Positions 5,232 through 56,402 of a DNA stretch of 64,000 nt are shown here, one piece after another. The stretch is from assembly GCA_002269645.1 (NCBI GenBank), contig NIVC01001464.1, positions 62,001 to 126,000 of the forward strand, read 5' to 3'. Position numbers and translations under genes: made by a program. This stretch comes from Macrostomum lignano. Its lineage: Eukaryota. Each line of letters begins with the position of its first letter. Position 1 is the stretch's first letter. Below the pieces are notes generated by a model. That model had not been told where the DNA came from and did no database searches. It saw only the letters and a program-made list of their open reading frames with translations.

Positions 5232-6834
5232 GATGAACCCTGACTGTGGATACTGTTCGGCTTGATTTGTCAACAGTAGAATAAATCAAGCAGACAGACG
5301 TTAAAAACAGCGATGTTGCCGGCTGGCAACTAGTTGGGTTCAGGCGATCGCTCAGGTGGATATTCCGACTAGCCTGTTTCCGTAGTCGGATTTATGGGAA
5401 ACGGCAACTAAGGGCAGTTGCTATTTTAAGCGCACGAAGGAAGGCCAAGTCCGAGGCGAAGAATGCAGTACACAAAAATGCGCAGATGCACAAAACCGGT
5501 GACGCAAAGATGATGAACGAACAGCGATTGTATGCAGGCGAACAAAAATAGACTGGGTAATGCGGGTATGCGAGTTGCAGAAACCCTTTTTGCCTTTTGC
5601 GTTTTAAACTACCAAAAACGGGATCTCTCTTATTTCTTTCCTACGTGCCCAGTCCCAATGTAGCCATGATTAAATGGCAAAGAGTACACTCTCTCCGAGA
5701 TCCACCTCACCTCCGCCTCTGTATTAAAGGAATTCACAGTGGAGCCAAACACATGCGCAGAGGGGCGGATGAAAGAGATAGGGAAGGAGGGCTGGATTGG
5801 AGTGAAGGCCGCGACAGCAAATCCCCGCTGAACCACGAGGAGGGGGGGGGGCGCATTACGTTGGAATAGAAACTGTACAGTGAAGCAGGGGCTGCGTGTG
5901 GGAGGCAGGCTCAACCCCAAGGACCCCCTATCCACTTCTATACGGCCTATACAAAACTCCAACTGTGAAGAGTGGTGTGGAGTGTGGGCGCAACGACATG
6001 GAAAATTGGGAAAGAGAGGGCAAACTATGGAACTGGAACTTGGTGGGCTGCATTAGGGCATGGTCTGAGTTTTTTGGAGAGATTCACACTTGGGGAGACC
6101 AATGAAAATGTTTGGGGGACTTGGGGTGAAGACAGTGGGCCAAAGGCAATAATTTCCACCAGGTCCTGTTTTGTGCCCGATCACTTACTACAATGGAGAA
6201 TGGTGATAAAACCATTCGTCCTAGGAATACAACTATGGAACCTGGAAACAAGTTTAAAAGCCAGATGCAAAGAGGAGAAAAATTGGGCTTTGATGTTTTA
6301 GATTTTTTACGATTTGTTTCATAGAGGAGAGAGCAACACGGGCTAAAAATTAAAGTGGGGAAAGAAAAAGACGTGGGTACGAAGCAGAAGCCTAGAGGCG
6401 TGACTCACCCCAACAATCACGTGGGCATCAAGTCCTTTAGGTGTAAAAAGGCTGGACATGAACTACGAGTATGAAGGAATGAGTGACGGGAGTTGGAAAG
6501 GGGGCAGTCACAATCAAGAGCGCTAAGGGAAGAGAGTGGAGTGGAGAGCGAGAGGGAGCCAAAGCAAACAGGATTAATATTTCAAAACTAGAGGAATTAA
6601 CCCAGGAAACTTGATAGAATCACGAGCTTAAAAACGAGCACATATTAACTTTATACTACAACACCTAATTCTTGAATTGATGCTTCTAAGAGAATAATTT
6701 TTGAAATCGCAAGACATATGCGAGACACGTATATATAAGCACAATGACACGCACAGGGGACAGATTGATGAATGACTCATTCGATTGATAACACACGCTA
6801 GCAGAACACGTTCAGACTCTTACAAACTTTAGAA

Positions 6835-20841: not shown

Positions 20842-22699
<1,858 letters not shown>

Positions 22700-25484: not shown

Positions 25485-28400
25485 TTAGGCAACCACTGTG
25501 CCAGTTTCCTTATCAGCAGCCAGCAGCTCATTAGCAGAGTGCAGCATTCGAGCTGTTTGATCTTTCACTGACATGGCCTCCAGTCGGGCGGCTGGAGACT
25601 GGTACCAGCACTCAGTGAGCACTTGGCACAGTCTGCTCAGCACCGGGTGCTCATGCCAGATCGGCAGAATTGGCGGCCGAGCATTGGCTGGCGGACAGAC
25701 AACGGCTTGCATCTCTTCCAAAGTTGGATTGTTGGGCACCAGATCGTGATAGGGTTGCTGGTATTCTGGCTCAGCCGTGATGCCTCTGCAATGTGGTTTT
25801 GTTATAATAATTGGATCTGGGATGCTGGCCTAATCTGGTTACTGCATTGAGAATCTGGGATGCTGGCCTCATCTGATCAGTGTATTGGGGATCTGGGATG
25901 CTGGCCTCATCTGATCAGTGTATTGGGGATCTGGGATGCTGGCCTCATCTGATCAATGTATTAGGGATCTGGGATGCTGGCCTCATCTGATCAGTGTATT
26001 GGGGATCTGGGATGCTGGCCTCATCTGATCAATGTATTAGGGATCTGGGATGCTGGCTTCATCTGATCAATGTATTAGGGATCTGGGATGCTGGCTTTAT
26101 CTGATCAATGTATTAGGGATCTGGGATGCTGGCTTCATCTGATTAATGTATTGGGGATCTGGGATGCTGGCCTCATCTGATCAATGTATTAGGGATCTGG
26201 GATGTTGGCCTCATCTGATCAGTGTATTGGGGATCTGGGATGCTGGCCTCATCTGATCAATGTATTAGGGATCTGGGATGCTGGCTTCATCTGATCAGTG
26301 TATTAGGGATCTGGGATGCTGGCCTCATCTGATCAATGTATTAGGGATCTGGGATGCTGGCTTCATCTGATCAATGTATTAGGGATCTGGGATGCTGGCC
26401 TCATCTGATCAGTGTATTAGGGATCTGGGATGCTGGCTTCATCTGATTAATGTATTGGGGATCTGGGATGCTGGCCTCATCTGATCAATGTATTAGGGAT
26501 CTGGGATGTTGGCCTCATCTGATCAGTGTATTGGGGATCTGGGATGCTGGCCTCATCTGATCAATGTATTAGGGATCTGGGATGCTGGTCTCATCTGATC
26601 TGTTTATTGGGGATCTGGGATGCTGGTCTCATCTGATCAGTTTATTGGGGATCTGGGATGCTGGCCTCATCTGATCAGTGTATTGGGGATCTGGGATGCT
26701 GGCCTCATCTGATCAATGTATTGGGGATCTGGGATGCTGGCCTCATCTGATCAATGTATAAGGGATCTGGGATGCTGGCTTCATCTGATTAATGTATTGG
26801 GGATCTGGGATGCTGGCCTCATCTGATCAGTGTATTAGGGATCTGGGATGTTGGCCTCATCTGATCAGTGTATTAGGGATATGGGATACTGGCCTCATCT
26901 GATCAGTGTATTGGGGATCTGGGATGCTGGCCTCATCTGATGATCATTAACTGTATTGGGGATCTGGCTGGATGCTGGCCTTATTTCATCAGTATTGGGA
27001 ATATGGGATGCTGGCATCTTATCATCATTGACTGTATTGGGGATCTGGGATGCTGGTCTTATCTAATCTGTTTATTGGGGATCTGGGATGCTGGTCTCAT
27101 CTGATCAGTTTATTGGGGATCTGGGATGCTGGCCTCATCTGATCAGTTTATTGGGGATCTGGGATGCTGGCCTTATCTGATTAGTGTATTGGAGATCTGG
27201 AATGCTGGCCTCATCTGATCAGTGTATTGGGGATCTGGGATGCTGGCCTTATCTGATTAGTGTATTGGGGATCTGGGATGCTGGTCTCATCTGATCAGTT
27301 TATTGGGGATCTGGGATGCTGGCCTCATCTGATCAGTGTATTGGAGATCTGGAATGCTGGCCTCATCTGATCAGTGTATTGGGGATCTGGGATGCTGGCC
27401 TTATCTGATTAGTGTATTGGGGATCTGGGATGCTGGCCTCATCTCATTATTTGGATGCTAGCCTCATCTCATTATTTGGATGCTAGCCTCATCTCATTAC
27501 TGGGATGCTGGCCTAATCTTATCATTGGGAGATGCTGGCCTCATCTCATCAATGTATTGGGGATCTGGGATGCTAAAACTACCTGAGACGATACCAAAAT
27601 GCAAAAGCAAAAGTACAAAAACATGGCAATTACCTATTCGGATCATGGCACCTGACGGCAAGCTCCCAAAACACTAATCCAGTAGCATAGACATCAGCCT
27701 TGCGGAGAGCGGTGAAATCCCTGGCATCCTGACTGGCATTCAAGCATTCCGGACTCAGATAGCGCCTGGTACCAACTAGTCCATTGTTAGCCTCTCCAAT
27801 GCCGCTATCGCTGCCGCCTACAACTCCGAGTCCGCCGCTGCCAAATCCGATAACATTGCCGCAGCCGGGTTGCAGAGCTACGGCTAAACCAAAATCAGCA
27901 ATACAGCAAGACAGATCGGATTTCACCAGGATATTGTTAGATTTGATATCCCGATGCGCAATAGCTGGTTTGCATTTCACGCCGGTGATTTCGCTGTGGA
28001 GATGAGCCAGACCGCTGGCAATGCTGTGCAGCATTCGAGCCATGGTGTGCTGATCTACTGTACACCTGGTCAGGTAGCTCTGCAGAGATCCATTAGCGTG
28101 ATAGTCTGTAATGAGCCACAGCTGAGTCTCCAGTCCAATATCGATATTATCAATAGCAATGAAGCCCAGGATGGAGTCGTGTCGCATGCCGGGCAGTTCG
28201 TACATGTGACCTTCGGTGGACCAGGAGCTCTCCGCCCGGCTGCTGAATATCTTCACCGCCACGGGGTCGTTGCGCCACTCGGAACGGTACACCTGAGGTG
28301 ATTTAGGGAAATTTTTGGGGAGATTTGCTGATGAAAATCGAGCGTCACTAGGTTTAAAGCTTAATGAGAGCACGGGGACCAAATACCAGACTTTTCACAG

Positions 28401-31400
28401 TCATTAATAGATGGGATTACTGACGAGTGCGCTTATGAAGTGATTCATAATTAGTTATGTAGACTATGTAGGGCTTTTTAACTGCTGATGAAGTACTTGA
28501 TAAGGTGGTCATAGGGTATTTGATAGTTGGTCATGAAGTGTCTGATAGGTGGTCATGGGGCATTTGATAGTTGGTCATGGAGTGTCTGATAGGTGGTCAT
28601 GGGGCATTTGATAGTTGGTCATGGAGTGTCTGATAGGTGGTCATGGGGCATTTGATAGTTGGTCATGGAGTGTCTGATAGGTGGTCATGGGGTGTTTGAT
28701 AGGTGGTCATGGGGTGTTTGATAGGTGATCATGGGGTGTTTGATAGGTGGTCATGGGGTGTTTGATAGGTTGTCATGGAGTGTCGGATAGGTGGTCATGG
28801 GGTATTTGATAGGTGGTCATGGGGTGTTTGATAGATGGTCATGGAGTGTCTGATAGGTGGTCATGGGGTAGTTTCAGATAAGTGGTCATGGAGTGGTTGA
28901 TGAGTGGTCATTGAGTGGCTGATGAGTGGTCATGGATTGGCTGAGGAGTGGTCATGGATTGGCTGAGGAGTGGTCATGGATTCGCTGAGGAGTGGTCATG
29001 GATTCGCTGAGGAGTGGTCATGGATTGGCTGAGGAGTGGTCATGGATTGGCTGACGAGTGGGCATGGAGTGCTTGATAAGTGGTCATGGAGTGCTAGATA
29101 GGTGGCTATAGAGTGCTTTATGAGTGGTAATTTAGTGATTGCTGAAATGTTCGTTAATGATTTATGTGGATCAGGGTCTCAATGACTGATTTATCTGGCT
29201 AATGGAGTGAGTCATTAGGGCGTTCCCCAGATCCGCGAACAACAAACAAACAAACAAAAAGCACAAACCTGACCAAACCGCCCCTGACCAATTAGCTCGC
29301 GATGTTCAATCTCCCTAGCAACAGTCCTAGGCAACAATATTGGCAGACCGGATCCGCTGCCAGTTTGAGAATGATCAAACACCGGAGCGGTATCAACGCC
29401 ACTGGTATTCTGATTCGGCTGCTGCTGCTGCTGCTGAGTCGATGGCAGTGAGTCGCCATTACAGACACCGGTACTGGAGCTGCCACCGCCGGCGCTTCCA
29501 CGCGAACGATTATTAGGCACAGCCAGCATCTTCTGCTGCTGCTGGCTAACATTAGGAGCCGGACAGACAAAAGCAACAGCAGATGACGAATTGGAAGAAT
29601 TCGAAGCAGTTAGAAGTTTTTCAACTGCGCCAGTTGAATCCAACTTCTGGCGATGCTGACCGAAAGCGAATGACGAACCGGAGGCTGATGATAAAGCTGG
29701 CTGTTGATGATGTTGCTTCTGCTGATGCTGAGGTGGCGGCGAAGGTGACGAAGAGCCGGACGACTTCAATAAAGAGTCCGACTGGTCCAGCCGTTGGCTC
29801 TGCTGCAGTTTCAATCTGCGCCAATGAGAATAGCAGATGCCTAACAGGCAGGCCAGGAGAGCCAGACAGGCGAAGGCCATGGCGCCAACTGTGGCAGCCA
29901 CAATAGCACTGCTGTTTGGCTGCGGATGAAGGGAAGATTCTTAGCATTTATGAGTCATCGTAGGACGAGGTACTACCGTTTCTTATAGCTCTATTAATTA
30001 CGATTATATGTTTATAATTTAATATCCTAGGTATACTCAGCAACATTGAAAAGTCGGCATCACAGAAGATTGGACGGATTAAAGCTACCCCGAATCAGTT
30101 TTCTCGTATATTTTATTGCAGAAATAGTCCAAGAGAAATTGCTCACTGGCGCCCTATACTGGCGACTTTCAATGTTGCTTGAGCATACATTTTCTGTGTC
30201 TAAAAATCATAACGGCACAACTTAACTCATACAAAAATGACAATATATAGAGTCCTAAATTTATAAACAAAAAAGCTCTATAAAAATATCAACGAATCTA
30301 TAAGAAAGACAAAGTATATAAAAACTTTTTGTTTTCGCTAAAACCTGTTTGTCTTCATTCTTAAGTTTAGTCCTTGTTGTAATGTAGTTATGTAGACATT
30401 TGTAGGTCAAAAACCCCACCCTCCTCTTAACAGGTTCTGACATTTTGTCAGAATCGGATGGCTCACCCAAGACTCGTTATCAGCTCTGCGGTGACTAGCC
30501 ATACCAAGCGCTGATCCATCATTCTCGCTAGCCGGATGCTGTACACCATAGAATCCAGACAGCGAAGTCAAGTACTGCTGCAGATAGCCATCAGTAGCAT
30601 ACGCGTCCATCATCTCTTTAGCTCCAATCTGAGCAAAGAATGACGTCTGATTCAAACTCTTAGGCAAATTACAGCCAGACGGTTCTGAGCAGCAATTCCC
30701 ATCCGGAGTTTTTGAGCACATCAGATTGCCAATAAAATCCACCGTGTCTTGATTAAGCCGATTGCTATTGCTGTTACGTAGCGAGTGAACATCACTGTAG
30801 CGTCTGTTAAAATTGCAAGTTTGTTGGGGTCGGGGATAAAACGTTTTAAAAATAAGCTGGCACAAAATCAAATTAGACAGAGCATACAAATACAGACTGG
30901 GTTATGGACATGTATATTTCCCATGTTGTATAGTTCCCTCAACTAGGAATATTGGTCACTCACTAAATGAGACTTAAAACACCATGAAATTATTGATATG
31001 ATGGGAGGATGGGGTACAATAGTAGAAACAAATTAATTTTGAGGTTACAGACTTGAGCAACATAGATTTTTTCTGTCATATGCCCAATGTGTACTAGAGG
31101 CTAGTAGAGGCTAAAGTTGAGATGAATGTTTTTTTACACTCAATGTGAGGGAGCTCTAAATAAACCTAGGATTCAAGCAACATAATTTTTGACACTACAT
31201 TCAAATGGTGTGGTTTGGGTAATAGGGGTTAAAGTAAGTTAAATGCAGTCCTAGACATTGTTCTAATACAATAAATGAATAATATCTATTAAACAAGCAA
31301 ATAGTAGACATAAGCTAGTTATAGGGAATAAGATCATTCAATTCAAAGGCTTTGATCAGATAATGTTATTTTAATTTTTTATGTATGATTAAAAATAGCA

Positions 31401-34400
31401 CCTATATTAAAGTTTTTTAATCTATGTGAGCTACCAATTATTAGTATGTTTAGCAATTAACAAAATATGCCATCATTTTGGTGATACAATATTGAATTTG
31501 ATCTGATAGCTTTTATACACTAATGGTCAGAAAGTTTTTTATCTATTGTATGTTTAATATATATATATCTGTAATTTAATATCTACAAGCAATCTAACCT
31601 GCTTTAATTATATATGCAATTTAGCTTAAAAATGAATGAACAAATAAAAAATTGTTTTTTTTGTAATAGCTATCATTATTGAAATGAATGTATTTTTTAT
31701 ATAGATATCAATTGATAAACTAGTTCATTTTTTTTCAATTTAAACAAATTGAAAAAAATGAAAATCAACAAAGGTTGCCTTAATATCTATTTTATTTTAT
31801 GAATATAAGACTTAAGTATATATATAACGTGGCTAAAAGATATTGAGGTAAAATTTAAGATGTCATAGCATCTATAAAACATAAAAACCTAGAGGAATAG
31901 ACTGCTAATCAATGAGTCAAATAACCTTATCACTATTTTGCCAATAGTCTTACCCTTTTGCCAGTTAAATAAGCTTGTCATAAGACTTAAAGCTAGACAT
32001 AAACATATTTAAGTATTTTTTTAACTTTTATTTTTTGTCCATATTTGCATTTTTACTTAATGTTGCAGAGTTATAGATTTATAGAAAATCCTTTAAATTT
32101 TTTGTTTTATTAAGGACTTTGCCAAGATGCCTTTAGAAGGTAACCCGATGGAAAATCTGGAGGGGTGTTTGAGGCTCACTTTTTGGCGCTAGCCTCTAAT
32201 GATTTTTTTTATTTGGTTACACTAAACCAATGGGAGGCTAGAGGCTGGGTTAGAGGCTCGACTCTTGGGTGTCGCGGCCTCTAAAAATGACCCAGATTTG
32301 ATGCTTGCAATTTGAGGCTCGTATTGGAGGCTCAATTAGAGGCTGGCGATTTGATGCTCAGTTAGAGGCTGAATTAGAGGCTGAATTAGAGGCTGGCGAT
32401 TTGATGCTCAGTTAGAGGCTGAATTAGAGGCTCAATTAGAGGCTGGCGATTTGATGCTCAGTTAGAGGCTGAATTAGAGGCTCAATTAGAGGCTGGCGAT
32501 TTGATGCTCAGTTAGAGGCTGAATTAGAGGCTCAATTAGAGGCTGGCAATTTGATGCTCAGTTAGAGGCTGAATTAGAGGCTCAATTAGAGGCTGGCGAT
32601 TTGATGCTCAGTTAGAGGCTGAATTAGAGGCTCAATTAGAGGCTGGCAATTTGATGCTCAGTTAGAGGCTGAATTAGAGGCTCAATTAGAGGCTCAATTA
32701 GAGGCTGGCGATTTGATGCTCAGTTAGAGGCTGAATTAGAGGCTCAATTAGAGGCTGGCGATTTGATGCTCAGTTAGAGGCTGAATTAGAGGCTGGATTA
32801 AAGGCTGGCGATTTCGAGATTGTCAATGAGAGGCTGACCCAGCAACTGGGGATCTGGCTAGTAGAGTAAAATTTACTAAAAAATGGAAGAATCAAAAATT
32901 TGTACAGCACAGCAACGGCCGCGCTCATTGAGAACAGTAATAACAGTAACAGCAGTAATTAAGCATGCAGTTATTGGAGCAAAGACAGCATATTTACAAT
33001 GTATTTACATTCGCATAAAATTTTAAATATAACACTGCTTGGTGCGCCAGCTAGCAAGAAAAAGACAAAAAACGGAGAAAGAAAGCGAGAAAGATAAAAA
33101 GACCACTAGCCTACGAATAATTCAGCTGCGAGAACGGCATCAGAGCAATATGCGTTCTGCTCACAAGGCACGTGCCCAGGATTTTGTCGGTGCCGACTGT
33201 GTATGCAGCAGCGTCCGATTCATCGTCACTGCAGAAAGGATCCTCCATCAGGCGCACGACATCAGGCGACGGGTCCCAGCGGAATATTCCAGCCTCTAAC
33301 CCAGTCTCTAATACAGCCTCAAATTTAGCCTCGAATCCTGCCTCAAATTTAGCCTCAAATCCAGCCTCAAATTTAGCCTCGAATCCAGTCTCTAATCCAG
33401 CCTCTAATCCAGCCTCAAATTTAGCCTCGAATCCAGTCTCTAATCCAGCCTCTAATCCAGCCTCTAATTGAGCCTCGAATCCAGTCTCTAATCCAGCCTC
33501 GAATCCAGTCTCTAATCCAGCCTCTAATTCAGTCTCTAATACAGCCTCGAATTTAGCCTCTAAATTAAAAATCAAATTCAGGCTCAAATAAAGCCTCTAA
33601 TCCAGCCTCGAATTTAGCCTCTAAATTAAACGTCAAATCCAGGCTCAAAAAAAGCCTCTAATCCAGCCTCGAATCTAGCCTCTATCTCAGACTCTAATTT
33701 GAACCTCTGCTCTAGCCTCAAATCCAGCATCAAATACAATCTCTTTTGAGGTTAAAGATTATTTTTGAGGCTAGCATCAAACCAGCCTCAAAAAATCCAC
33801 TTTGAGGTTCATTTGAGGCTGCGTTTGAGGCTAGGGTAAAAATTAGAGGCTGCCCTTTTCCCATCGGGTAAATTCTAATAAAACATATTTTTTATAAATC
33901 AATAGCTCAGCAGTATAGTTATACAAAGCCATTGGCATTAGTAGATTCAGAACTTATATAAAAGTCAATTTTAATAAATAGGTTGGCTTTATTGTGCCTA
34001 GTCAAGAAACAATTTAAATATGCTAAATGATGATTATTACAAAAGAAAAAAAGAATTTTAAAACATATTAGTAATAATAGTAATATAGCAAAAATTATAA
34101 GAAAAAGTTTTCTTTTGTTAGCATGTATGTTCTACCATTTATGCCTTTGAGCCATCTTGCCTATTCCCTAGACATTTTGTCTCCTAGGCATTCTGGCTTT
34201 TCCATTCAGATTTCCAATTAGACAATAGATTTTTTTCTTAGGAGTAATATGTACCTAATTTTGTAGGCAACTCTGATCCATTGCAAAACCCTATCTAGAT
34301 TAGAATAAAATAGTTTAGGCTCATTCCATATAAGATGGACATATTTGGAAAATAGAAAAAATTCAATATTTTTGCTTGCCATTGCCTAATTAGCCTATTT

Positions 34401-37400: not shown

Positions 37401-39996
37401 AAAATGTGCACTGTAAAAAAGTCATAATGTAGATCATAGCAGGTCTATGCACTAAAAAATGAAATTTATAGGTTTTTCAATTTTTATGCTGAAACAAATT
37501 AGAAAGTTGTACTTTAAGTGTAAAGTAGCTTGAACACTAATTTTTAGAGGAAATATTCTTTAAAAATTATAAGAGTTTTACTGAACTTTAAAATAACTGT
37601 TTTTGCTAAAAAATATTATTCTTTGTTTTACTTTTGTTAAAAATTTTCCAGCGTAAAAACAACCTTCTGGACTATGAAAAGTAGGACTTAAGCGCACATA
37701 TACTACATGGTATATAACTATGTTGAATGCATGTAAAAGTCAAATCCTATCTGACTATTCTGTGGCAAACAGCTTCTTTGCAAGCTTCTTTGATGGAGCA
37801 CGCGCATACCTTCTTTTAGGGCACACAAATAGGCTTGTGCAAGAATTCTATCTTGGAGTCTTTCTAAAGTTTAGTAAAAGTTTTGAATTGCTAAAAGTAT
37901 ATTTTTATTAAAAATGGCATATAAACAATTTTAGTCTTGGTTAAGGGTCGACGATATTGAATTTTTGAGATTTTTGAGATTAGCCTCTTTGAGATATTCG
38001 AGATTCAATTGAGATTCGAGACATATAGTGGAACAACAAAAAATATTTAATATGTGAAATAAAGTAAATCCTCTAAATCTGCTACTGGTGGTAGGTCTAT
38101 TAGACAAGCTCCTGGGATTCCAAGAACCCTCTCCGAAGGCACAGAATTCAAAATGATAAAAAAATTTTGCCAACCCAATAAAACAAAGTATTGCTAACTA
38201 TCATTAGCAAACAAAAATACAACTCATTGAAATAACTGGATTACACATTAAATATTCCCATGCGGATACGAGGTACCTAACTGACAAACTAGCGAGACAA
38301 AAGAAACCATCAATGTCACATGTTGAGTGACGTATGAAACATTTGCCGACACTTATTTAGACACTTTAGTTTCTGTCATATGAATTGTAGGAACAAGCAT
38401 TAAATTTGTTTATTCCTCACAAACTACCAGTAAACTGCTTTATTTTAAGCTTTTTTTGCTTTATTTTATTAAATATGAATTAGGAAGTGTCCTGGACAAA
38501 TTTAACATTCTTCTTCACATGAAGAGAATCTAATCTATATAGAATAACAAATTTCATGATTCATATTTAATAAAATAAAGCAAAAAAGCTTAAAATAAAG
38601 CAGTTTACTGATAGTTTGTTAGGAATAAACAAATTTAATGCTTGTTCCTACGATTCGTATGACAGAAACTAAAGTGTCTATAAAAGTGTCTGAATAAGTG
38701 TTGGCAAATGTTTAATGAGTTGAGTGTTGAACTTGGACATCAACTTCAAGTAGCTGATGAATTGCTGGAACATTAATTGTTTGAAGCAAAAATGCATTAC
38801 ATTACAAATAAATTGAAAATAGTAAATATATTGCTCAAAACAGTGCGCATTCTCTAATGCAAGCCATGACCATCGGCATCTATATGCCATGCAGCTATTT
38901 TATTTATAAACTATACATTCTTTGTAATATGCAAAATTTAAACAAAATATTGACATTGACACCATCAGGCTTTATGATATAATACTTCATGCTTCTTATA
39001 TAGATCAAAATGTTTTTTTGAACATTTAATTTTTATCTCGAATCTTGACATTTTTTCAAGATTATGAAGTTGAGATTGAGATTTTGAGAAAACCCCGAGA
39101 TTTTGGATCTTGAGATTGAGATTGAGATCTCATCCAACCCCTAGTCTTGGTGTAATTTCTTTTAAATTTTACACTGGAATTAAATTGAAATAAACATGAA
39201 TTATCATTCCAGCATACGCCTGCCATGATCTAGACTATGGTAGGCCCTACCTAGCATGATCTAGAATATAGTTTAGGCCTAGATAGTATCTTATATAAAA
39301 ATTGTAAAATAAACATTTTGCTATTTATATGATTGATATAACAATAATAACAACTACCTTCTAAAAATTAAAAAATATTTTGGCTAGGCCTAGCATTTAA
39401 AAAACATTATAATATAAAGCTTGATAATATATTTATATTAGGCCAGTAATCAATTGTAATAACAAAAGTACTTACCCAGCTGTATAGTAATGCAGATACT
39501 TAACATCAAGTCCCATTAATTTCAGTGATCCCTTTAGTCCTTTTAACCACTCTTGTCCTTGTAATTTAAGCTTGCAAAGCAAAGATAAAATGTTCCCTTT
39601 AGGACCAGCTCTTTCACCAGTTAAACAAGGATTAAGAGAATCAAAAATACAAGCCATTGAAGTATCTCTTATAGCAGCTTCACGACAAAGAGGATTGTTG
39701 AACAAGGGTTGAAATGTCGTAACTATATTAGCAATGCAGTCGTTCGAAGTAGTTTTTAATTCAGTGCCATCAAAAATTAAACATTGTTGCAGGGTGAGAA
39801 AGTTAACTTGTGACTTTACGAACTCATTCCAAAGTGCGGTAGAGTTGGGGTTCATAGATTTACATTCATTTTCGGCGATGGTGTCATTGCTGATTGTCGA
39901 GTAAGAAATAAATTCTCGGGGAAAATAGATGCACTGAACTGCACAAACCGCTTTCACAACAATGAGAAGCACAGTAAGTTTAATAAGGAATTGCAT
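25485..39996 (-). CDS. TGFBR1: TGF-beta/activin type I receptor Ser/Thr kinase (ALK4/5/7-like L45 loop), 5 exons, 822 aa
   Basis: Exons 39996-39476 (signal peptide, phase 2), 30803-30467 (CCSEPSGCN Cys box), 29919-29269 (TM, GS box TGSGSGLP, IGQGRFG), 28292-27634 (VAVKIFSS, L45 DNIDIGLE, HRDIKS, DFGLAV, VGTRRY), 25785-25485 (PYHDLVP, ECWY). All junctions are GT-AG and phase-compatible. The exon 1 link spans an 8.7-kb intron and is the least certain. The symbol denotes the clade, not strict orthology. Confidence 0.88.
25812..27572. repeat. 38-bp minisatellite in receptor intron 4
   Basis: Unit ggggatctgggatgctggcctcatctgatcagtgtatt, ~46 copies. Confidence 0.97.
28497..29120. repeat. 22/21-bp minisatellite (gataggtggtcatggggtgttt to gaggagtggtcatggattggct) in receptor intron 3
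   Basis: Tandem array whose unit changes gradually along its length. Confidence 0.93.
30032..30187. mobile_element. Shorter, inverted copy of the 8124-8396 MITE in receptor intron 2
   Basis: Same TIR (tatactcagcaacattgaaaagtcg ... gcgactttcaatgttgcttgagcata). The interior is the reverse complement of 8150-8228. Confidence 0.75.
32143..33869. mobile_element. Foldback-like non-autonomous element with short TIRs and inverted subterminal tandem arrays
   Basis: ACCCGATGGAAAA at 32143 and TTTTCCCATCGGGT ending at 33869. The left arm is rich in TAGAGGCT (50-bp unit, 32330-32800); the right arm is rich in AGCCTCTA (33293-33720). There is a unique ~460-bp core. Confidence 0.7.
34317..35104. mobile_element. 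MITE with 18-bp perfect TIRs
   Basis: aggctcattccatataag (34317) and cttatatggaatgagcct (ends 35104); internal gttacgaccat motif repeated four times. Confidence 0.65.
35711..36390. repeat. ~170-bp inverted repeat pair (35711-35880 and 36219-36390)
   Basis: Arms are reverse complements with scattered mismatches. Each arm also has an internal gccatttctattgg/ccaatagaaatggc inversion. Confidence 0.85.
37942..39143. mobile_element. hAT-type non-autonomous element with an 8-bp TSD
   Basis: Perfect flanking direct repeat GTCTTGGT (37934-37941 and 39144-39151). Imperfect TIRs taagggtcgacga / tcatccaacccta; subterminal gagatt repeats. Confidence 0.7.
38337..38713. repeat. ~145-bp-arm hairpin (38337-38482 and 38557-38713) nested in the hAT element
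   Basis: aaacatttgccgacac...aaatatgaat pairs with attcatattt...gttggcaaatgttt; ~75-nt loop; one short insertion in the right arm. Confidence 0.88.
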
Positions 39997-43175: not shown

Positions 43176-43317
43176 CCTAACTTTATTTGTTATAAGGCTT
43201 GTACGCTCGAAAGTCGACCTTCCAAGGCATTTGTTACATGAGCAGACCCAGGCCAATATTCCAATTTAGCCCTAAATTAATGTGACTGCACTTGGAATTT
43301 AATTGCAATTTCATGTT

Positions 43318-46300
43318 ATGGCAGCAGCAGTTGCAGAAACAGCATTGGTTCCCACTGTGGCCACTCAACAGCAGCCACCAGCAGAAGATACTCAACCAAA
43401 AGATGACTCAAATCTGTACTCATCTCGCCTGCCTCGAATGACCAAAGAGGAGCTCAAGCGAATCTGCAAAGAGCTCAAACTGTACCTGACCCCTCACCTG
43501 AATGACATTCTCTATCTGCACTATAAAGGCTATGCTCGCATCGAGAACCTGGAAGAGTACACCGGCCTCCGCTGCCTCTTCCTCGAGTGCAATGGAATTC
43601 GTAAATTAGAAAACCTGGACGCCCAGACAGAGATGCGCTGTCTTTACATGGCAAAAAATCTGGTTGAACGAATTGAAAATCTTGACTCAATGGTCAACTT
43701 GGACACCATCGATTTGAGTCACAATAGTCTGGAACGCATTGAGAACTTGTCTAACTTGACTAAACTGACTAAAGTGATTTTGGCTCACAATAAAATCTCC
43801 AGCATCGAAGATCTCAAAGGATTGCTGGATTGCCCATCGCTAACCGTGGTTGATTTGCAGCACAATAAAATTGAAGATGCTCAAGTTATTGATGAGATCT
43901 TTGTTAAGATGCCAAACCTGAGGGTGCTATACCTGCAGGGCAACCCAGTGGTCAAGCAGGTAAGGATTTTGGTTTATCTTCTTTGACCCATCTATCTGTT
44001 TATCGTTCCGCGTGCATCTATATCCCACCCGTCTTCCCAACTCTTCCCATCATCCAACCCATCCTCCCATTCCCACCCGTCTCCCCATCCTCTCCCATTC
44101 CCACCCGTCTCCCCATCCTCTCCCATTCCCACCCGTCTCCCCATCCTCCCATTCCCACCCGCCCCCCATCCTCCCATTCCCACCCGTCTCCCCATCCTCC
44201 CATTCCCACCCGTCTCCCCATCCTCTCATTCCCACCCCATCCTCTCCCATTCCCACCGTCCCCCATCCTCCCATTCCCACCCGCCCCCCATCCTCCCATT
44301 CCCACCCGCCCCCCCCCCCATCCTCCCATTCCCACCCGCCCCCCCCATCCTCCCATTCCCACCCGTCTCCCCATCCTCCCATTCCCACCCGTCTCCCCAT
44401 CCTCTCCCATTCCCACCCGTCCCCCATCCTCCCATTCCCACCCGTCTCCCCATCCTCTCCCATTCCCACCCGTCCCCCCATCCTCCCATTCCCACCCGCC
44501 CCCATCCTCCCATTCCCACCCGTCTCCCCATCCTCCCATTCCCACCCGTCTCCCCATCCTCTCCCATTCCCACCCGTCTCCCCATCCATTCCAACTTGTC
44601 TCCCCATCCTCTCCCCTTCCCACCCGTCTCCCCATCCATTCCAACTTGTCTCCCCATCCTCTCCCATTCCCACCCGTCTCCCCATCCATTCCAACTCGTC
44701 TCCCCATCCTCCCCCCATTCCCACCCGTCTCCCCATCCATTCCAACTCGTCTCCCCATCCTCTCCCATTCCCACCCGTCTCCCCATCCATTCCAACTCGT
44801 CTCCCCATCCTCCCATTCCCACTCGTTTCCCCATCCTCTCCCATTCCCACCCGTCTCCCCATCCATTCCAACTCGTCTCCCCATCCTCCCATTCCCACTC
44901 GTTTCCCCATCCTCTCCCATTCCCACCCGTCTCCCCATCCTCACATTCCAACTCATCTCCCCATCCTCCCATTCCCACTCGTTTCCCCATCCTCTCCCAT
45001 TCACACCCGTCTCCCCATCCCATTCCAACTCGTCTCCCCATCCTCCCATTACCACCCGTCTCCCCATCATCCCATTCCCACCCGTCTCCCCATCCTCTCC
45101 CATTCCCACCCGTCTCCCCATCCATTCCAACTCGTCTCCCCATCCTCCCATTCCAACTCGTCTCCCCATCCTCCCATTCCAACTCGTCTCCCCATCCTCT
45201 CCCATTCCCACCCGTCTCCCCATCCTCTCCCATTCCCACCCGTCCCCCCATCCTCCCATTCCCACCCGTCTCCCCATCCTCTCCCATTCCCACCCGTCTC
45301 CCCATCCTCCCATTCCCACCCGTCTCCCCATCCTCTTACAATTTCTTCTTAACCTCCATCCTACCGGTCTACCCACAGCCTCTCTATCTGTTCCCAAAGA
45401 ATCATATTTTACCCCCCCTACATATCTACGAGCTAACACCTGAAATCTACCCCAACATTTACAGATAAAATTCTACCGCAAGACGCTGACCCACAAGCTG
45501 CCCAACCTCACTTACCTGGACGACCGTCCGGTGTTCCCCAACGACAGGCGCTATGCTGAGGCCTACTTCTCCGGCGGGGCGGAAGCGGAACGAGCCGAAC
45601 GGAAACTCGTGCAAGAAGAAGAGCAGCAAAAGACCATGGCTAGCGTGGAGTGGCTGCTAAGGAAGCGCCAGAAAAATGAAGTGGCCACCGCTCAGGTGGG
45701 GGGGACTTAAAACATCCAATCAGGATAATTGTGAAATCCATTTAAAAGTCACTAAAAAACGTTAAAATGAGAATCATCCCCAAATCTAACCTGAGAATCC
45801 TCTAAATCTCACCTGGGAATCGTCCCCAACTATCACCTGAGAATCGTTTTTAAATCTCACCTGAAAATCGTCCCCAAATATCACCTGAGAATCGTCCCCA
45901 AATCTAACCTGAGAATCGTCTAAATCTAACCTGAGAATCGTCTGAATCTCACCTGGGAATCGTCCCCAACTAACACCTGAGAATCGTTTTTAAATCTCAC
46001 CTGAGAATCGTCCCCAAATATCACCTGAGAATCGTCCCCAAATCTAACCTGAGAATCGTCTAAATCTAACCTGAGAATCGTCTAAATCTCACCTGGGAAT
46101 CGTCCCTAACTATCACCTGAGAATCGTCTTTAAATCTCACCTGAGAATCGTCCCCAAATATCACATGAGAATCGTGTTAAATCTCACCTGAGAATTGTCC
46201 CCAACTATCACCTGAGAATCGTCCCCAAATCTCACATGAGAATCGTCCCGAAATCACACCCGAGAATCGTCCCCAAATCTCACCTGAGAATCGTCCCCAA

Positions 46301-47272
46301 ATATCACCTGAGAATCGTCCCCAAATCTAACCTGAGAATCGGCTAAATATAACCTGAGAATCGTCTAAATCTCACCTGGGAATCGTCCCCAACTAACACC
46401 TGAGAATCGTTTTTAAATCTCACCTGAGAATCGTCTCCATATCTCACCTGAGGATCGTCCCCAAATCTCACCTGAGTATTGTTCCCAAATCTTACCCGAG
46501 GATCGTCCCCAAATCTCACCTGAGTATTGTTCCCAAATCTTACCCGAGGGTCGTCCCCAAATTTCACCTGAGAATCGTCTCCATATCTCACCTGAGAATC
46601 GTCTCCAAATATCACCTGAAAATCGTCTCCAAATCTTACCTTGACAATCGTTCCCTAATCTCACCTGAGAATCGTCTCTAAATCTCACCTAAGAATCGTT
46701 CCTAAATCTACCTTCACCTGTCCTCATTGTACCCTCAGGCAAAGGCGGAGGCTGCCGCGGTGTCGCGAGGCGAAGACCCCGCCTCCGTGCCTCCCGTGGA
46801 TCCCGCCAAGTGCGACTGGCTCTACGGCGATCACGTGACCTCCGACACCAACAGCGATGGCTTCGTTGACGTGATCGAAGCCGACCCACCCACCGGCGAT
46901 GCCGGAGACGCCGTCGACAACCTGCCAATGATTGCTCCGCGTCAGAATGACGGCGGTGGAATTTTCTCCTCTGTCGCCAAGGATGCAGAAGAGCCGGCCG
47001 CGGATTCCAGCATCCTGTTGCTAGGCAACTCGCAGCCGTCTGAGGACAGGGATGCCGCTGCGCCCGCTGTGAAGAAATCTCCGCTGATTGTTGAACTGGA
47101 TGACATTCAGCCGACTGTTGACGAGCAGATCAGCACCACCAAGGAGCCGGCGGCTGCTCCAGTTGAGAGCAGCTCGACGCTGTCGATGACTGAAATTCGC
47201 GACGCTCTCGAGGTGGCGGCGACTGCGGCAACTGAGGCTGCTAAAAGTCAGCTGGACGATGAGCTGGATTGA
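43318..47272 (+). CDS. DNAAF1: Dynein axonemal assembly factor 1 (LRRC50/ODA7), 3 exons, 468 aa
   Basis: Exons 43318-43959, 45465-45695, 46739-47272 (all phase 0). [56 protein letters not shown], LRRs, LRRcap [25 protein letters not shown], acidic low-complexity tail. Confidence 0.96.
44020..45335. repeat. C-rich minisatellite (cccatcctcccattcccacccgtctc)n filling DNAAF1 intron 1
   Basis: Degenerate tandem array; explains the long Pro-rich and Gly-rich ORF calls at 43983-45468. Confidence 0.95.
45770..46712. repeat. 24-bp minisatellite (ctgagaatcgtccccaaatctcac)n in DNAAF1 intron 2
   Basis: Tandem array; same family as 49262-49915. Confidence 0.95.
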
Positions 47273-50023: not shown

Positions 50024-50719
50024 ATGTCTTCAGACTCGGCACCGAAGCAGTTATTAACAAAGTTTGTCGTGTCCCCGCTGACCGGACCGTCGCCCTACAT
50101 CAAGCCCTACTGCGTTGAATTTGTGCTTGACGGTGTCAATCGCAAGTGGCACTGCATGCGCAACCATGATGCAGTGGTGATCATTGTGTACAACACAGAT
50201 CGCAAAGCTCTAGTGTTAGTTCGCCAATTCAGACCAGCAACTTACTTGCAACGCTGTCTAGAGACTAACGGTGGCAATCTGGAGTCCTTAATGTCAGTTG
50301 AGACTGCTCCGCCTTTGCCAGCAGAAGCTGGCGATGTACTGGAAGCCTGCGCTGGCATCGTTGACAAACCCGACAAGAGCCTAGCAGAAATTGCCGCGGA
50401 AGAAGTGCTGGAAGAGTGTGGCTATCGAGTTGAACCGGATAAACTTGAACTGGTTGGCTGCTGTCGGTCTGGTGTCGGGGTGTCTTCTGCCAAGCAGACA
50501 ATCTACTATGCTGAGGTGTCAGATTCTGTGCGAGTCAGCGAAGGCGGTGGAAACGCTGCCGAAGGTGAACGCATTGAAGTTGTACACTGGCCTGTTGACC
50601 AGATCGATGAACTGCTGCTTGGAAATGGCGGTGGCACCAGCGGTAGTTGTAATGAAATTTACATTGGTCTGCAATTCTGCCTTCTCTGGTTCAAGGTTAA
50701 CAAGATGCAGTCTTCGTAG
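50024..50719 (+). CDS. NUDT14: Nudix hydrolase, UDP-glucose pyrophosphatase NUDT14-like, single exon, 231 aa
   Basis: SPYIKP, HDAVVIIVYN, LVLVRQFRPA, EACAGIVDKP, EEVLEECGY (Nudix box), GVSSAKQTIYYAEV, GGGNAAEGERIEV. Confidence 0.92.
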   Translation: MSSDSAPKQLLTKFVVSPLTGPSPYIKPYCVEFVLDGVNRKWHCMRNHDAVVIIVYNTDRKALVLVRQFRPATYLQRCLETNGGNLESLMSVETAPPLPAEAGDVLEACAGIVDKPDKSLAEIAAEEVLEECGYRVEPDKLELVGCCRSGVGVSSAKQTIYYAEVSDSVRVSEGGGNAAEGERIEVVHWPVDQIDELLLGNGGGTSGSCNEIYIGLQFCLLWFKVNKMQSS

Positions 50720-51730: not shown

Positions 51731-51823
51731 TAATTTCTCTAATTTTCTGTCTCCTTAGGGATCATAAATAATTCATACATATCCCCTACTGGTTGCTGCT
51801 CTCCCAGCAACCGGACAGCAACC

Positions 51824-56353: not shown

Positions 56354-56402
<49 letters not shown>

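What the first reader, a model, noticed from the sequence alone, without database searches (positions are those of the whole stretch)
27777..29313. Type I TGF-beta receptor with natural substitutions at gain-of-function sites and type-II-like kinase motifs
Seen: (a) the GS region reads [18 protein letters not shown] (codon 29311-29313); (b) the Mg-binding motif is DFG (27888-27896); (c) the activation segment ends ANNG-L-VGTRRY (Leu at 27777-27779); (d) Pro replaces Gln in the LVQRT helix. Known: the position after RTxAR is TGFBR1 T204 / ACVR1 Q207, where T204D, Q207D and the FOP allele Q207E activate signalling. The residue before VGT is the inhibitory Arg (TGFBR1 R372 / ACVR1 R375) that salt-bridges the DLG Asp; R375P is an FOP allele. 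Type I kinases normally have DLG and VGTKRY, whereas the constitutively active type II kinases have DFG and GQVGT(A/R)RY. Catalytic Lys, alphaC Glu and HRD are intact, and the L45 loop (DNIDIGLE) resembles the Smad2/3-specific DNKDNGTW. Inference: several changes converge on loss of autoinhibition, giving a ligand- or type-II-independent, FKBP12-insensitive Smad2/3 activator, or one controlled by a new mechanism. This is the strongest candidate for an undescribed system here.
Basis: partly seen in the sequence, partly recalled or inferred. Interest (0 to 1): 0.72.

Follow-up and report, generated by a model that had tools for sequence, protein, structure and literature searches.

The report
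Divergent flatworm TGF-beta type I receptor
This is a real, strongly conserved gene of the flatworm Macrostomum lignano for an unusual TGF-beta type I receptor kinase that naturally carries residues known as activating mutations in human receptors, but most of these residues turn out to be fairly common in divergent invertebrate receptors, so constitutive activity is possible but unproven.

Summary
All four residues are encoded at the stated coordinates and align to TGFBR1 T204/ACVR1 Q207, the DLG Leu, R372/R375 and Q198.

The window is Macrostomum lignano. The gene is BOX15_Mlig028938g2, with five exons on the minus strand encoding 822 aa. Two other genomic copies carry identical codons, so assembly error is excluded. 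GS+kinase is under strong purifying selection: 0 nonsynonymous against 16 synonymous variable codons among the copies, and cross-species dN/dS of about 0.06.

- Pro, Glu, DFG, VGTRRY, KSNN and an activation-loop insert are shared by two transcripts from unidentified related organisms.
- The Arg-to-Leu loss is seen only in M. lignano.
- DFG is invariant in 21 insect Saxophone/ACVR1 orthologues.
- Among 116 diverse type I representatives, 25% have D/E at the T204 site, 34% have DFG and about 15% lack the basic lock residue.
- Two unrelated sequences show the same triple combination.
- The GS-loop Ser/Thr, the RTxAR arginines, the Leu-Pro motif and its hydrophobic pair, and the L45 loop are all conserved.

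I read this as a functional receptor with probably weakened autoinhibition that is still regulated through its GS region. The ectodomain is atypical.

The parts
39476..39996 (-). Exon 1: start codon, signal peptide (39940-39996) and an N-terminal Cys-rich ectodomain module of about 150 aa
   Evidence: The donor GG|GTAAGT at 39476/39475 joins in phase to exon 2. The junction ...HYYTAG|RYSDV... is reproduced in the related transcripts L002 and L003 and in the 822-aa annotated paralogue PAA67851.1.
30467..30803 (-). Exon 2: ectodomain with the Cys-box CCSEPSGCN (30668-30694) and a membrane-proximal spacer
   Evidence: Canonical AG/GT splice sites. The CC-X5-CN box is the only part that aligns to canonical type I ectodomains (hhalign).
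29269..29919 (-). Exon 3: transmembrane helix (29830-29907), a long Ser/Gln-rich juxtamembrane region, the GS loop SQTGSGSGLP (29341-29370), helix alphaGS2 [11 protein letters not shown] (29308-29340; Pro 29329-29331, Glu 29311-29313) and the start of the Gly-loop
   Evidence: Pfam TGF_beta_GS scores 23.7 bits against a cut-off of 21.3. The annotated partial protein PAA67653.1 starts exactly at this exon.
27634..28292 (-). Exon 4: kinase core. Catalytic Lys 28251-28253, alphaC SWSTEGHMY 28200-28226 (Glu 28212-28214), L45 loop DNIDIGLE 28128-28151, HRDIKSNN 27933-27956, DFG 27888-27896, the Gly-rich variable activation-loop segment 27780-27878 (33 residues; 17 more than human TGFBR1), Leu 27777-27779, VGTRRY 27759-27776 and SPE 27747-27755
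   Evidence: There are zero nonsynonymous differences among the three M. lignano copies across GS+kinase.
25485..25785 (-). Exon 5: end of the kinase C-lobe and a short tail; stop codon TAA at 25485-25487
   Evidence: Acceptor cattgcag|A in phase 2. Aligns to the TGFBR1 C-lobe. Identical to PAA67653.1.
25813..27444 (.). Intron 4 minisatellite (38-bp unit, about 43 copies); similar arrays fill intron 3 (28497-29105) and parts of intron 1 (32295-32814, 33288-33735)
   Evidence: Tandem Repeats Finder. These repeats generate spurious ORFs such as 33111-33587.

Best explanation
The finding lies in exons 3-4 of an intact five-exon gene, BOX15_Mlig028938g2 of Macrostomum lignano (822 aa). [quoted passage not shown]

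The gene belongs to a divergent subfamily. So far this comprises three M. lignano copies, the M. lignano paralogue P0139, and transcripts from two unidentified related organisms. The subfamily has a non-canonical Cys-rich ectodomain and a shared set of derived kinase features:
- Pro and an acidic residue in helix alphaGS2;
- SWSxEG in helix alphaC;
- HRDxKSNN;
- DFG;
- VGT(R/V)RY;
- an activation-loop insert, present only in the close relatives.

M. lignano additionally lost the activation-loop Arg. In vertebrate type I receptors this Arg salt-bridges the HRD and DLG aspartates (the 'electrostatic lock').

Most likely mechanism (inferred, not shown): the inactive state is less tightly held than in ALK2 or ALK5. 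This would give a lower activation threshold or some basal activity. The receptor would still be switched through its GS loop, by type II receptor phosphorylation and FKBP12 release, and would signal to a Smad2/3-type R-Smad through its invariant L45 loop.

Shown: gene structure, residue identities, their fixation in three copies, strong purifying selection on GS+kinase, and the phylogenetic order of the changes.

Inferred: the consequences for activity, FKBP12 binding and Smad choice.
For: - Identity and organism: an exact match of a window ORF to GCA_002269645.1 contig NIVC01001464.1. The annotated partial protein PAA67653.1 equals my exons 3-5. An 822-aa paralogue confirms the full gene model.
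- Type I class: GS motif plus kinase; TGFBR1 2.9e-95, ACVR1 1.7e-89, type II 3.7e-63 or weaker.
- Not an error: codons are identical in three loci.
- Function retained: variable codons among the copies are 0 nonsynonymous to 16 synonymous in GS+kinase (p about 1e-10 against neutrality). Cross-species dN/dS is 0.055-0.067. The related genes are transcribed and spliced the same way.
- Order of changes: P0121 (85% identity) and P0122 (74%) keep Pro, Glu, DFG and VGTRRY, but have Arg before VGT.
- Weakened autoinhibition is plausible. ALK2 R375 forms inhibitory salt bridges to the HRD and DLG aspartates, and Q207E repels FKBP12 Glu55 (PMC3481300). Mutating the lock Arg gives leaky signalling when FKBP12 is removed (PMC5578689).
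- Still GS-regulated: the GS-loop Ser/Thr (S/T-G-S-G-S/A-G), both RTVAR arginines and the Ile-Leu pair after Leu-Pro are conserved across transcripts whose synonymous sites are saturated. That pair corresponds to ALK5 L195/L196, which insert into FKBP12 (PMC7911104). The L45 loop AIDNIDIGLETQLW is identical in all three organisms.
Against: - No activity data exist. Every functional statement is extrapolated from human ALK2 and ALK5.
- The same residues are frequent in divergent type I receptors, and DFG is the rule in Saxophone. They may therefore be neutral or compensated in their own context.
- One related sequence (P0121) has Gln-Pro instead of Leu-Pro, so FKBP12 binding may not be under constraint.
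- The alphaC changes (F243S, R244T, E247H in TGFBR1 numbering) have unknown effects and could even reduce activity.
- The cross-species dS is saturated, so those dN/dS values are rough.
- The AlphaFold model is only moderate (pLDDT 72) and the activation loop is unresolved.
Confidence: 0.55

Rival explanations
1. One reading: the combined changes abolish autoinhibition. The receptor would then be a constitutive Smad2/3 activator that needs no ligand or type II receptor and is insensitive to FKBP12, effectively a natural FOP-like or T204D-like receptor.
For: Glu aligns to the T204/Q207 site and the lock Arg is absent. Literature on Q207E/D and R375 mutants supports loosened autoinhibition (PMC3481300, PMC5578689). 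The activation segment scores best against ACVR2A/B. Among the three recent copies the ectodomain shows 13 nonsynonymous to 3 synonymous changes, compatible with relaxed constraint on ligand binding, against 0 to 16 in the kinase. [quoted passage not shown]
Against: The GS-loop phospho-acceptors, the RTxAR arginines and the FKBP12 anchor pair are conserved under strong purifying selection, which would not be expected if the switch were obsolete. In ALK2, lock-Arg mutants leak only when FKBP12 is removed, and Q207E is a weak allele (PMC5578689, PMC3481300). DFG is normal in Saxophone orthologues. The related transcripts with Glu and DFG still keep the lock. Between those two transcripts the ectodomain shows dN/dS of 0.31, so it is not free of constraint.
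Confidence: 0.15
2. The unusual residues are lineage-typical, functionally neutral or compensated variants. The receptor would be regulated like any other type I receptor, and the vertebrate 'gain-of-function' reading would not transfer.
For: D/E at the T204 site occurs in 29/116 diverse type I representatives, DFG in 39/115, a non-basic lock residue in about 16/105 and Pro in 8/116. The triple combination also occurs in P0209 and P0232. Three different M. lignano type I genes carry an acidic residue at this site. DFG and HRDIK are invariant in insect Sax/ACVR1.
Against: The survey sequences are uncharacterised cluster representatives of mostly unknown organisms. Frequency therefore says nothing about their regulation, and they may share the same relaxed control. 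Canonical arthropod, mollusc and vertebrate receptors are invariant at these sites, which argues the positions matter. Acidic residue and DFG co-occur more often than chance (14/27 against 23/87, Fisher p=0.019, not corrected for phylogeny).
Confidence: 0.25
3. Artefact or decaying gene: the variants are assembly or sequencing errors, or the locus is a pseudogene.
For: Only a partial 536-aa protein is annotated on this contig. The introns are full of minisatellites. The Arg-to-Leu difference sits in an indel-prone stretch.
Against: The reading frame is open across five exons with canonical splice sites. Three independent loci have identical codons at all four sites. GS+kinase shows 0 nonsynonymous to 16 synonymous changes. 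Related transcripts exist.
Confidence: 0.02
4. A kinase-impaired or non-canonical receptor, such as a decoy, a scaffold, or a receptor for a ligand outside the TGF-beta family. This would follow from the unrecognisable ectodomain and the altered alphaC helix and activation loop.
For: The ectodomain has no Pfam match, and profile-profile comparison aligns only the Cys-box (E=0.15). The alphaC residues F243, R244 and E247, which are invariant or nearly so in canonical receptors, are replaced. The paralogue P0139 has HCD instead of HRD.
Against: In the window gene every catalytic residue is intact: Gly-loop, Lys, alphaC Glu, HRD, Asn, DFG and SPE. The kinase domain is far more constrained than the ectodomain. 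The Cys-box and L45 loop are conserved.
Confidence: 0.05

Closest known systems
TGFBR1/ALK5, ACVR1B/ALK4, ACVR1C/ALK7 and Drosophila Baboon (activin/TGF-beta branch type I receptors)
   Same: Best whole-domain match (TGFBR1 322 bits; lepidopteran Baboon about 50% identity). Shares the GS loop, the Leu-Pro motif, the RTxAR helix and the kinase fold. The L45 loop shares D-N-x-D-x-G...TQLW with ALK5-type DNKDNGTWTQLW.
   Different: Glu in place of T204/Q, Pro in place of Q198, DFG in place of DLG, no Arg/Lys lock, VGTRRY, KSNN, a 17-residue longer activation loop, and alphaC SWSTEGH. The ectodomain is not recognisable as Activin_recp. In an NJ tree it falls outside the Baboon/TGFBR1 cluster.
Human ACVR1/ALK2 FOP alleles Q207E and R375P, and engineered TGFBR1 T204D / ALK Q-to-D
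   Same: The same two positions are changed. The alphaGS2 string RTVAREI is identical to the Q207E protein crystallised as 6eix. The lock Arg is absent, as in R375P/Q/E (PMC3481300, PMC5578689).
   Different: Here the changes are wild type, fixed in three gene copies, under purifying selection, and combined with many other substitutions. No activity data exist. The related transcripts have Glu but keep Arg.
Type II receptors ACVR2A/ACVR2B
   Same: IADFGLAV...PG...VGTRRY. The catalytic loop plus activation segment scores highest against ACVR2B and ACVR2A. No basic lock residue.
   Different: The window protein has a GS region and a type I L45 loop. Overall similarity to type II receptors is about 105 bits lower than to type I.
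Insect Saxophone / ACVR1 orthologues
   Same: HRDIKSKN and ADFGLAV are invariant in 21/21 sequences, so DFG and HRDIK are ordinary in a BMP type I receptor.
   Different: Sax keeps Gln at the 207 site (RTLAKQI) and the Arg lock (NPRVGTKRY), and has a canonical ectodomain.
Flatworm and nematode type I receptors reported to act without a type II partner (Echinococcus EmTR3; C. elegans SMA-6 and DAF-1)
   Same: These are precedents that invertebrate type I receptors can signal without a co-expressed or genetically required type II receptor (PMC10073696, PMC8819019).
   Different: Their residues at the four sites were not examined here. No orthology to the Macrostomum subfamily was shown.

Membership tests
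[quoted passage not shown] | GS (SGSGSG) region immediately N-terminal to the kinase domain | tested here: met
   Pfam PF08515 TGF_beta_GS scores 23.7 bits against a cut-off of 21.3. TGSGSGLP aligns to TGFBR1 and ACVR1.
[quoted passage not shown] | Kinase domain more similar to type I than to type II receptors, with intact catalytic residues | tested here: met
   TGFBR1 322 bits, ACVR1 303, BMPR1B 291 and ACVRL1 270, against ACVR2A 217 and TGFBR2 201. Lys, alphaC Glu, HRD, Asn and DFG are present.
[quoted passage not shown] | Signal peptide, single transmembrane helix, and an extracellular Cys-box CC-X5-8-CN (definition as in PMC10073696) | tested here: met
   By inspection of the model: MQFLIKLTVLLIVVKAVCA, the hydrophobic stretch AIVAATVGAMAFACLALLACLLGICY followed by HWRRLK, and CCSEPSGCN. 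No dedicated transmembrane or signal-peptide predictor was run.
[quoted passage not shown] | Canonical three-finger Activin_recp ectodomain (typical of the family, not strictly defining) | tested here: not met
   No Pfam hit even at E<=10. hhalign against 12 canonical ectodomains aligns only 14 columns around the Cys-box (E=0.15). The AlphaFold model is unusable (pLDDT 35).
[quoted passage not shown] | FKBP12 docking site: Leu-Pro followed by a hydrophobic pair | tested here: met
   The sequence G-L-P-I-L corresponds to ALK5 LP-L195-L196 (PMC7911104). Actual binding was not tested. The related P0121 has Q-P-I-L.
[quoted passage not shown] | Activation-loop Arg/Lys 'electrostatic lock' (called strictly conserved in human type I receptors, PMC5578689) and a DLG motif | tested here: not met
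   Leu precedes VGT and no basic residue lies in the ten residues before it. DFG replaces DLG. Neither feature is universal: about 15% of type I representatives are non-basic at the lock and 34% have DFG.
Constitutively active type I receptor (T204D / Q207D / FOP-like) | Acidic residue at the T204/Q207 position | tested here: met
   Glu489, GAG at 29311-29313.
Constitutively active type I receptor (T204D / Q207D / FOP-like) | R-Smad phosphorylation without ligand or type II receptor; reduced FKBP12 inhibition | not testable with these tools
   This requires cell-based or in vitro kinase assays.
TGF-beta family type II receptor | No GS region; kinase domain clusters with ACVR2, TGFBR2 or BMPR2 | tested here: not met
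   A GS region is present. Whole-domain scores favour type I by more than 100 bits. Only the 57-residue catalytic loop plus activation segment scores marginally higher against ACVR2A/B.

The most novel reading that the evidence does not exclude
Macrostomum, and perhaps flatworms more widely, may carry a separate subfamily of type I receptors with a new kind of ectodomain. Their kinase would have evolved towards the constitutively active, type-II-like state: an acidic alphaGS2 residue, DFG and a type-II-like activation segment. In this reading the M. lignano lineage took the last step by deleting the Arg lock. The result would be a naturally 'FOP-like' receptor whose output is set by expression or by a novel ligand or partner, rather than by type II phosphorylation.
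Probability: 0.15. Interest if true: 0.75.

Novelty: new variant of a known kind. Interest (0 to 1): 0.45.

Why it matters
The rules for type I receptor autoinhibition come almost entirely from human ALK2 and ALK5 and from disease alleles. These rules are the GS helix, FKBP12 and the Arg-Asp lock.

This locus is a wild-type receptor under strong selection that carries an FOP-type Glu, lacks the lock Arg and has DFG. Its close relatives differ at exactly the lock position, which gives a natural pair for testing what each element contributes.

The survey also shows that 'strictly conserved' regulatory residues are in fact variable. They differ in a quarter to a third of divergent type I receptor lineages, and DFG is the norm in Saxophone. 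Structural models of receptor activation should take this into account.

M. lignano is a laboratory model, so the question can be tested in vivo.

If the residues prove neutral, that is also useful. It would show that the effect of the human gain-of-function substitutions depends on sequence context.

Tried and rejected
1. A candidate 5' exon at 33115-33290 (FCSDDES...SQLNYS) was rejected. It had a phase-compatible GTAGGC donor, but related transcripts and the annotated 822-aa paralogue join exon 1 (39476-39996) directly to exon 2. The ORF 33111-33587 is mostly translated minisatellite.
2. The search for homologous proteins with the GS+kinase query returned only hits of about 50% identity. It missed M. 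lignano proteins identical to the query across the kinase domain, and also P0121. The exhaustive representative search and an ectodomain query found them. 'No close relative' was therefore a prefilter artefact.
3. Exact look-ups of window ORFs 21827-22696 and 39472-39996 found nothing, because they are parts of spliced genes.
4. The AlphaFold2 model of GS+kinase is only moderate (pLDDT 72) and the activation loop, residues 177-216, scores below 50. I drew no conformational inference from it and ran no fold search. The ectodomain model is unusable (pLDDT 35).
5. Pfam on the ectodomain gave no hit. hhalign to canonical ectodomains was not significant.
6. Literature searches for Macrostomum TGF-beta receptors and for the SRA run numbers found nothing relevant. 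The organisms behind L002, L003 and L004 remain unidentified.
7. Assembly error and pseudogene were rejected.
8. A type I/type II chimera made by exon shuffling was rejected. The type-II-like segment lies inside the single kinase exon, its score advantage is under 10 bits, and DFG/HRDIK also occur in Sax.

Caveats of the survey:
- The sequences are representatives of 50%-identity clusters, mostly of unknown taxonomy, and some are fragments or mis-assemblies.
- The lock residue was extracted with a pattern anchored on xxGTxRY.
- The counts are not phylogenetically independent.

Full report
**1. The observation.**
I read 27000-30500 on the minus strand. It gives [31 protein letters not shown] followed by a GT donor. 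After an intron full of 22/44-bp repeats comes a kinase exon containing HRDIKSNN, IADFGLAV and ANNGLVGTRRY.
- Glu, GAG, 29311-29313;
- Pro, CCT, 29329-29331;
- DFG, 27888-27896;
- Leu, CTA, 27777-27779.

phmmer against all PDB chains puts TGFBR1 first (2.9e-95, 322 bits). ACVR1 follows (303), then BMPR1B (291) and ACVRL1 (270), with type II receptors far below (217 bits or less). The printed alignments place Glu opposite TGFBR1 T204 / ACVR1 Q207, and the helix string RTVAREI is the same as in chain 6eix. Pro falls opposite Q198, Phe opposite the Leu of DLG, and Leu opposite R372/R375. Pfam finds Pkinase and the GS motif.

**2. Gene and organism.**
A neighbouring window ORF (50024-50719) matches exactly a gene on contig NIVC01001464.1 of assembly GCA_002269645.1. 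An ectodomain query then returned named Macrostomum lignano proteins.

The cluster holds three genes:
- BOX15_Mlig028938g1: PAA67851.1, 822 aa, another contig.
- BOX15_Mlig028938g3: PAA54711.1, 823 aa, a third contig.
- BOX15_Mlig028938g2: PAA67653.1, a partial 536 aa, on the window's own 130,954-bp contig.

PAA67653.1 equals my translation of exons 3-5 residue for residue.

The full model has five exons on the minus strand and encodes 822 aa. All junctions are AG/GT:

| Exon | Window coordinates |
|---|---|
| 1 | 39996-39476 |
| 2 | 30803-30467 |
| 3 | 29919-29269 |
| 4 | 28292-27634 |
| 5 | 25785-25485 |

The exon 1 to exon 2 junction is confirmed by intron-less Logan contigs that carry related genes (L002 from SRR28338163; L003/L004 from SRR30276804/12). 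I take these contigs to be transcripts, because each holds the complete coding sequence without introns. An exon I first proposed at about 33.1-33.3 kb is not used.

**3. Real and constrained.**
I extracted the coding sequences of g1 and g3 from their loci. All four codons are identical in the three copies.

Variable codons among the three copies:

| Region | Nonsynonymous | Synonymous |
|---|---|---|
| Ectodomain | 13 | 3 |
| TM + juxtamembrane | 3 | 4 |
| GS + kinase | 0 | 16 |

- Ectodomain against kinase: Fisher p = 3e-6.
- Kinase against neutral expectation: p about 1e-10.
- Against the two related transcripts, GS+kinase dN/dS is 0.055-0.067. dS is saturated, so these values are approximate.

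Assembly error and pseudogene are therefore excluded.

**4. Which features are old and which are new.**
The exhaustive representative search found two close relatives, P0121 (85% identity) and P0122 (74%). Everything else was at 56% or below.

Both relatives share these features with the window gene:
- PRTVARE(I/V);
- SW-S-x-EGH in alphaC;
- an identical L45 loop (AIDNIDIGLETQLW);
- HRD(I/V)KSNN;
- IADFGLAV;
- a Gly/Ala-rich activation-loop insert;
- VGTRRY.

Both still have Arg directly before VGT (..DNGVRVGTRRY and ..GAIRVGTRRY). M. lignano reads ..ANNGLVGTRRY, and the codon alignment shows an indel at this spot. So the Arg lock was lost only on the M. lignano lineage. The Glu, Pro and DFG package is older.

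A more distant M. lignano paralogue, P0139 (contig NIVC01000022.1), shares the atypical ectodomain (BLASTP 2e-6) and 47% of the kinase domain. It has RTIARD, KSNN, DFG and the same L45 type. It keeps the Arg, has HCD instead of HRD, and has a degenerate GS loop.

In an NJ tree:
- the window gene, P0121 and P0122 group at 100% bootstrap;
- adding P0139 gives 78%;
- adding P0205, which also has Glu and DFG, gives 89%;
- the group sits apart from the Baboon/TGFBR1 and Sax/ACVR1 groups.

**5. How unusual are the residues?**
Among 65 close canonical hits (arthropods, molluscs, vertebrates) they are very unusual: Q 65/65; Q/T/S with no D/E; DLG 63/65; R/K/H with no Leu; VGTK 63/65.

The picture changes among 116 type I representatives of 50%-identity clusters:
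- D/E at the T204 site: 29 (25%);
- DFG: 39 of 115 (34%);
- non-basic lock residue: about 16 of 105;
- Pro at the Q198 site: 8;
- GT-R-RY: 28.

Acidic residue plus DFG plus a non-basic lock also occurs in P0209, and in P0232 (STISREI, ADFGLAV, KFLVGTKRY). A third M. lignano type I gene, Mlig015953 (P0187), has RTIAKEV and PLVQGTKRY with DLG.

P0154, one of the DFG sequences, proved to be an insect Saxophone/ACVR1 orthologue. In 21 such orthologues, including 'sax [Drosophila busckii]' and several 'type I BMP receptor saxophone' entries, HRDIKSKN and ADFGLAV are invariant.

DFG and HRDIK are thus ordinary in a type I receptor. The catalytic loop plus activation segment, with the insert removed, does score best against ACVR2B and ACVR2A (60.8 and 60.1 bits, against 51-59 for type I). 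The margin is small.

**6. Mechanism.**
Established knowledge:
- In ALK2 the activation-loop Arg375 salt-bridges the HRD and DLG aspartates and hydrogen-bonds to alphaC.
- Gln207 hydrogen-bonds to FKBP12 Glu55, and Q207E creates repulsion there (PMC3481300).
- A basic residue at the lock is conserved in all human type I receptors and absent from type II receptors.
- Lock mutants leak only when FKBP12 is removed (PMC5578689).
- FKBP12 is anchored by the hydrophobic pair after Leu-Pro (PMC7911104).

In the window protein the lock is gone and the 207-equivalent residue is Glu, so a looser inactive state is a reasonable inference.

Everything needed for the classical switch is nevertheless kept, and kept under strong selection:
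- four Ser/Thr in the GS loop (SQTGSGSG);
- both arginines of RTVAR, which tie alphaGS2 to the N-lobe;
- Leu-Pro followed by Ile-Leu;
- an invariant L45 loop.

I therefore favour a receptor with weakened autoinhibition that is still switched through its GS loop (confidence 0.55). Normal regulation with neutral or compensated variants comes second (0.25). A decoy or otherwise impaired kinase (0.05) and an artefact (0.02) are unlikely.

The near-neutral pattern in the ectodomain among the three recent copies is the one observation that leans towards relaxed ligand control. The numbers are 13 to 3: p=1.0 against neutrality, and p=0.02 against the long-term ratio of 0.31. These are small numbers, and between the two related transcripts the ectodomain is constrained.

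Precedents for type I signalling without a type II partner exist in Echinococcus (EmTR3; PMC10073696) and C. elegans (SMA-6, DAF-1; PMC8819019).

**7. Ectodomain.**
Residues 20-286 contain 12 Cys, including a CC-X5-CN box. They have no Pfam match. They align to canonical type I ectodomains only at the Cys-box (hhalign E=0.15). The AlphaFold model was useless (pLDDT 35). The architecture is shared with P0139 and the two related transcripts.

**8. Verdict.**
- Observation: confirmed.
- Interpretation: partly supported.
- Classification: a divergent member, which I class as a new variant, of the type I receptor family. It is already present in databases only as an uncharacterised 'hypothetical protein / receptor protein serine/threonine kinase'.
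- Interest: moderate (0.45). It offers a clean natural experiment on type I receptor autoinhibition in a laboratory flatworm. Its 'gain-of-function' residues are not unique, and the regulatory GS apparatus is intact.

Noticed in passing
window 693-5273 (-): A single uninterrupted ORF of about 1512-1526 aa encodes an EGFR/ErbB-type receptor tyrosine kinase. Pfam finds Recep_L, Furin-like, GF_recep_IV and a Tyr kinase domain at 4e-90. It has no introns, unlike the neighbouring receptor gene.
   Followed up: partly
window 25813-27444, 28497-29105, 32295-32814, 33288-33735: The introns of the receptor gene are largely made of minisatellites (units of 38 bp, 22/44 bp, 50 bp and 24/48 bp, in 10-43 copies). 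These produce long spurious ORFs such as 33111-33587. The whole window is rich in such arrays.
   Followed up: partly
window 39476-39996 and 30467-30803 (ectodomain, aa 20-286): The ectodomain has no Pfam match, and only its CC-X5-CN box aligns to canonical type I ectodomains. Among the three M. lignano copies it shows 13 nonsynonymous to 3 synonymous variable codons, against 0 to 16 in GS+kinase. That is either relaxed or diversifying selection on the presumed ligand-binding part.
   Followed up: partly
L007 (M. lignano contig NIVC01000022.1), protein P0139: A distant paralogue of the same subfamily, sharing the ectodomain and the KSNN, DFG and RTIARD features. It has HCD instead of HRD, a degenerate GS loop (SSSGYGNP) and no activation-loop insert, and may be a kinase with altered or reduced activity.
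   Followed up: partly
protein P0187 (BOX15_Mlig015953g1) and cluster members: A third M. lignano type I receptor gene has Glu at the T204 site (RTIAKEV) and no basic lock residue (PLVQGTKRY), but has DLG. An acidic residue at this site seems to be a lineage-wide habit in M. lignano type I receptors.
   Followed up: no
window 27780-27878 (activation-loop insert): The insert is Gly/Ala/Ser-rich and varies in length and sequence between the three organisms. A short (G/S)SD(S/P)G core is kept in all three; its role is unknown.
   Followed up: no
window 43303-47272 (+), 50024-50719 (+), 51800-61420 (+), 21827-22696 (-): Other genes in the window: an LRR protein of 468 aa, a NUDIX-domain protein of 231 aa, a multi-exon TTC21/IFT139-like gene of 1323 aa, and a TPR-containing ORF.
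   Followed up: partly
tool behaviour: The word-prefiltered protein search with the kinase domain missed M. lignano proteins identical to the query across that domain, probably because its 8000 candidate slots were saturated by canonical receptors. The ectodomain query found them at once.
   Followed up: yes
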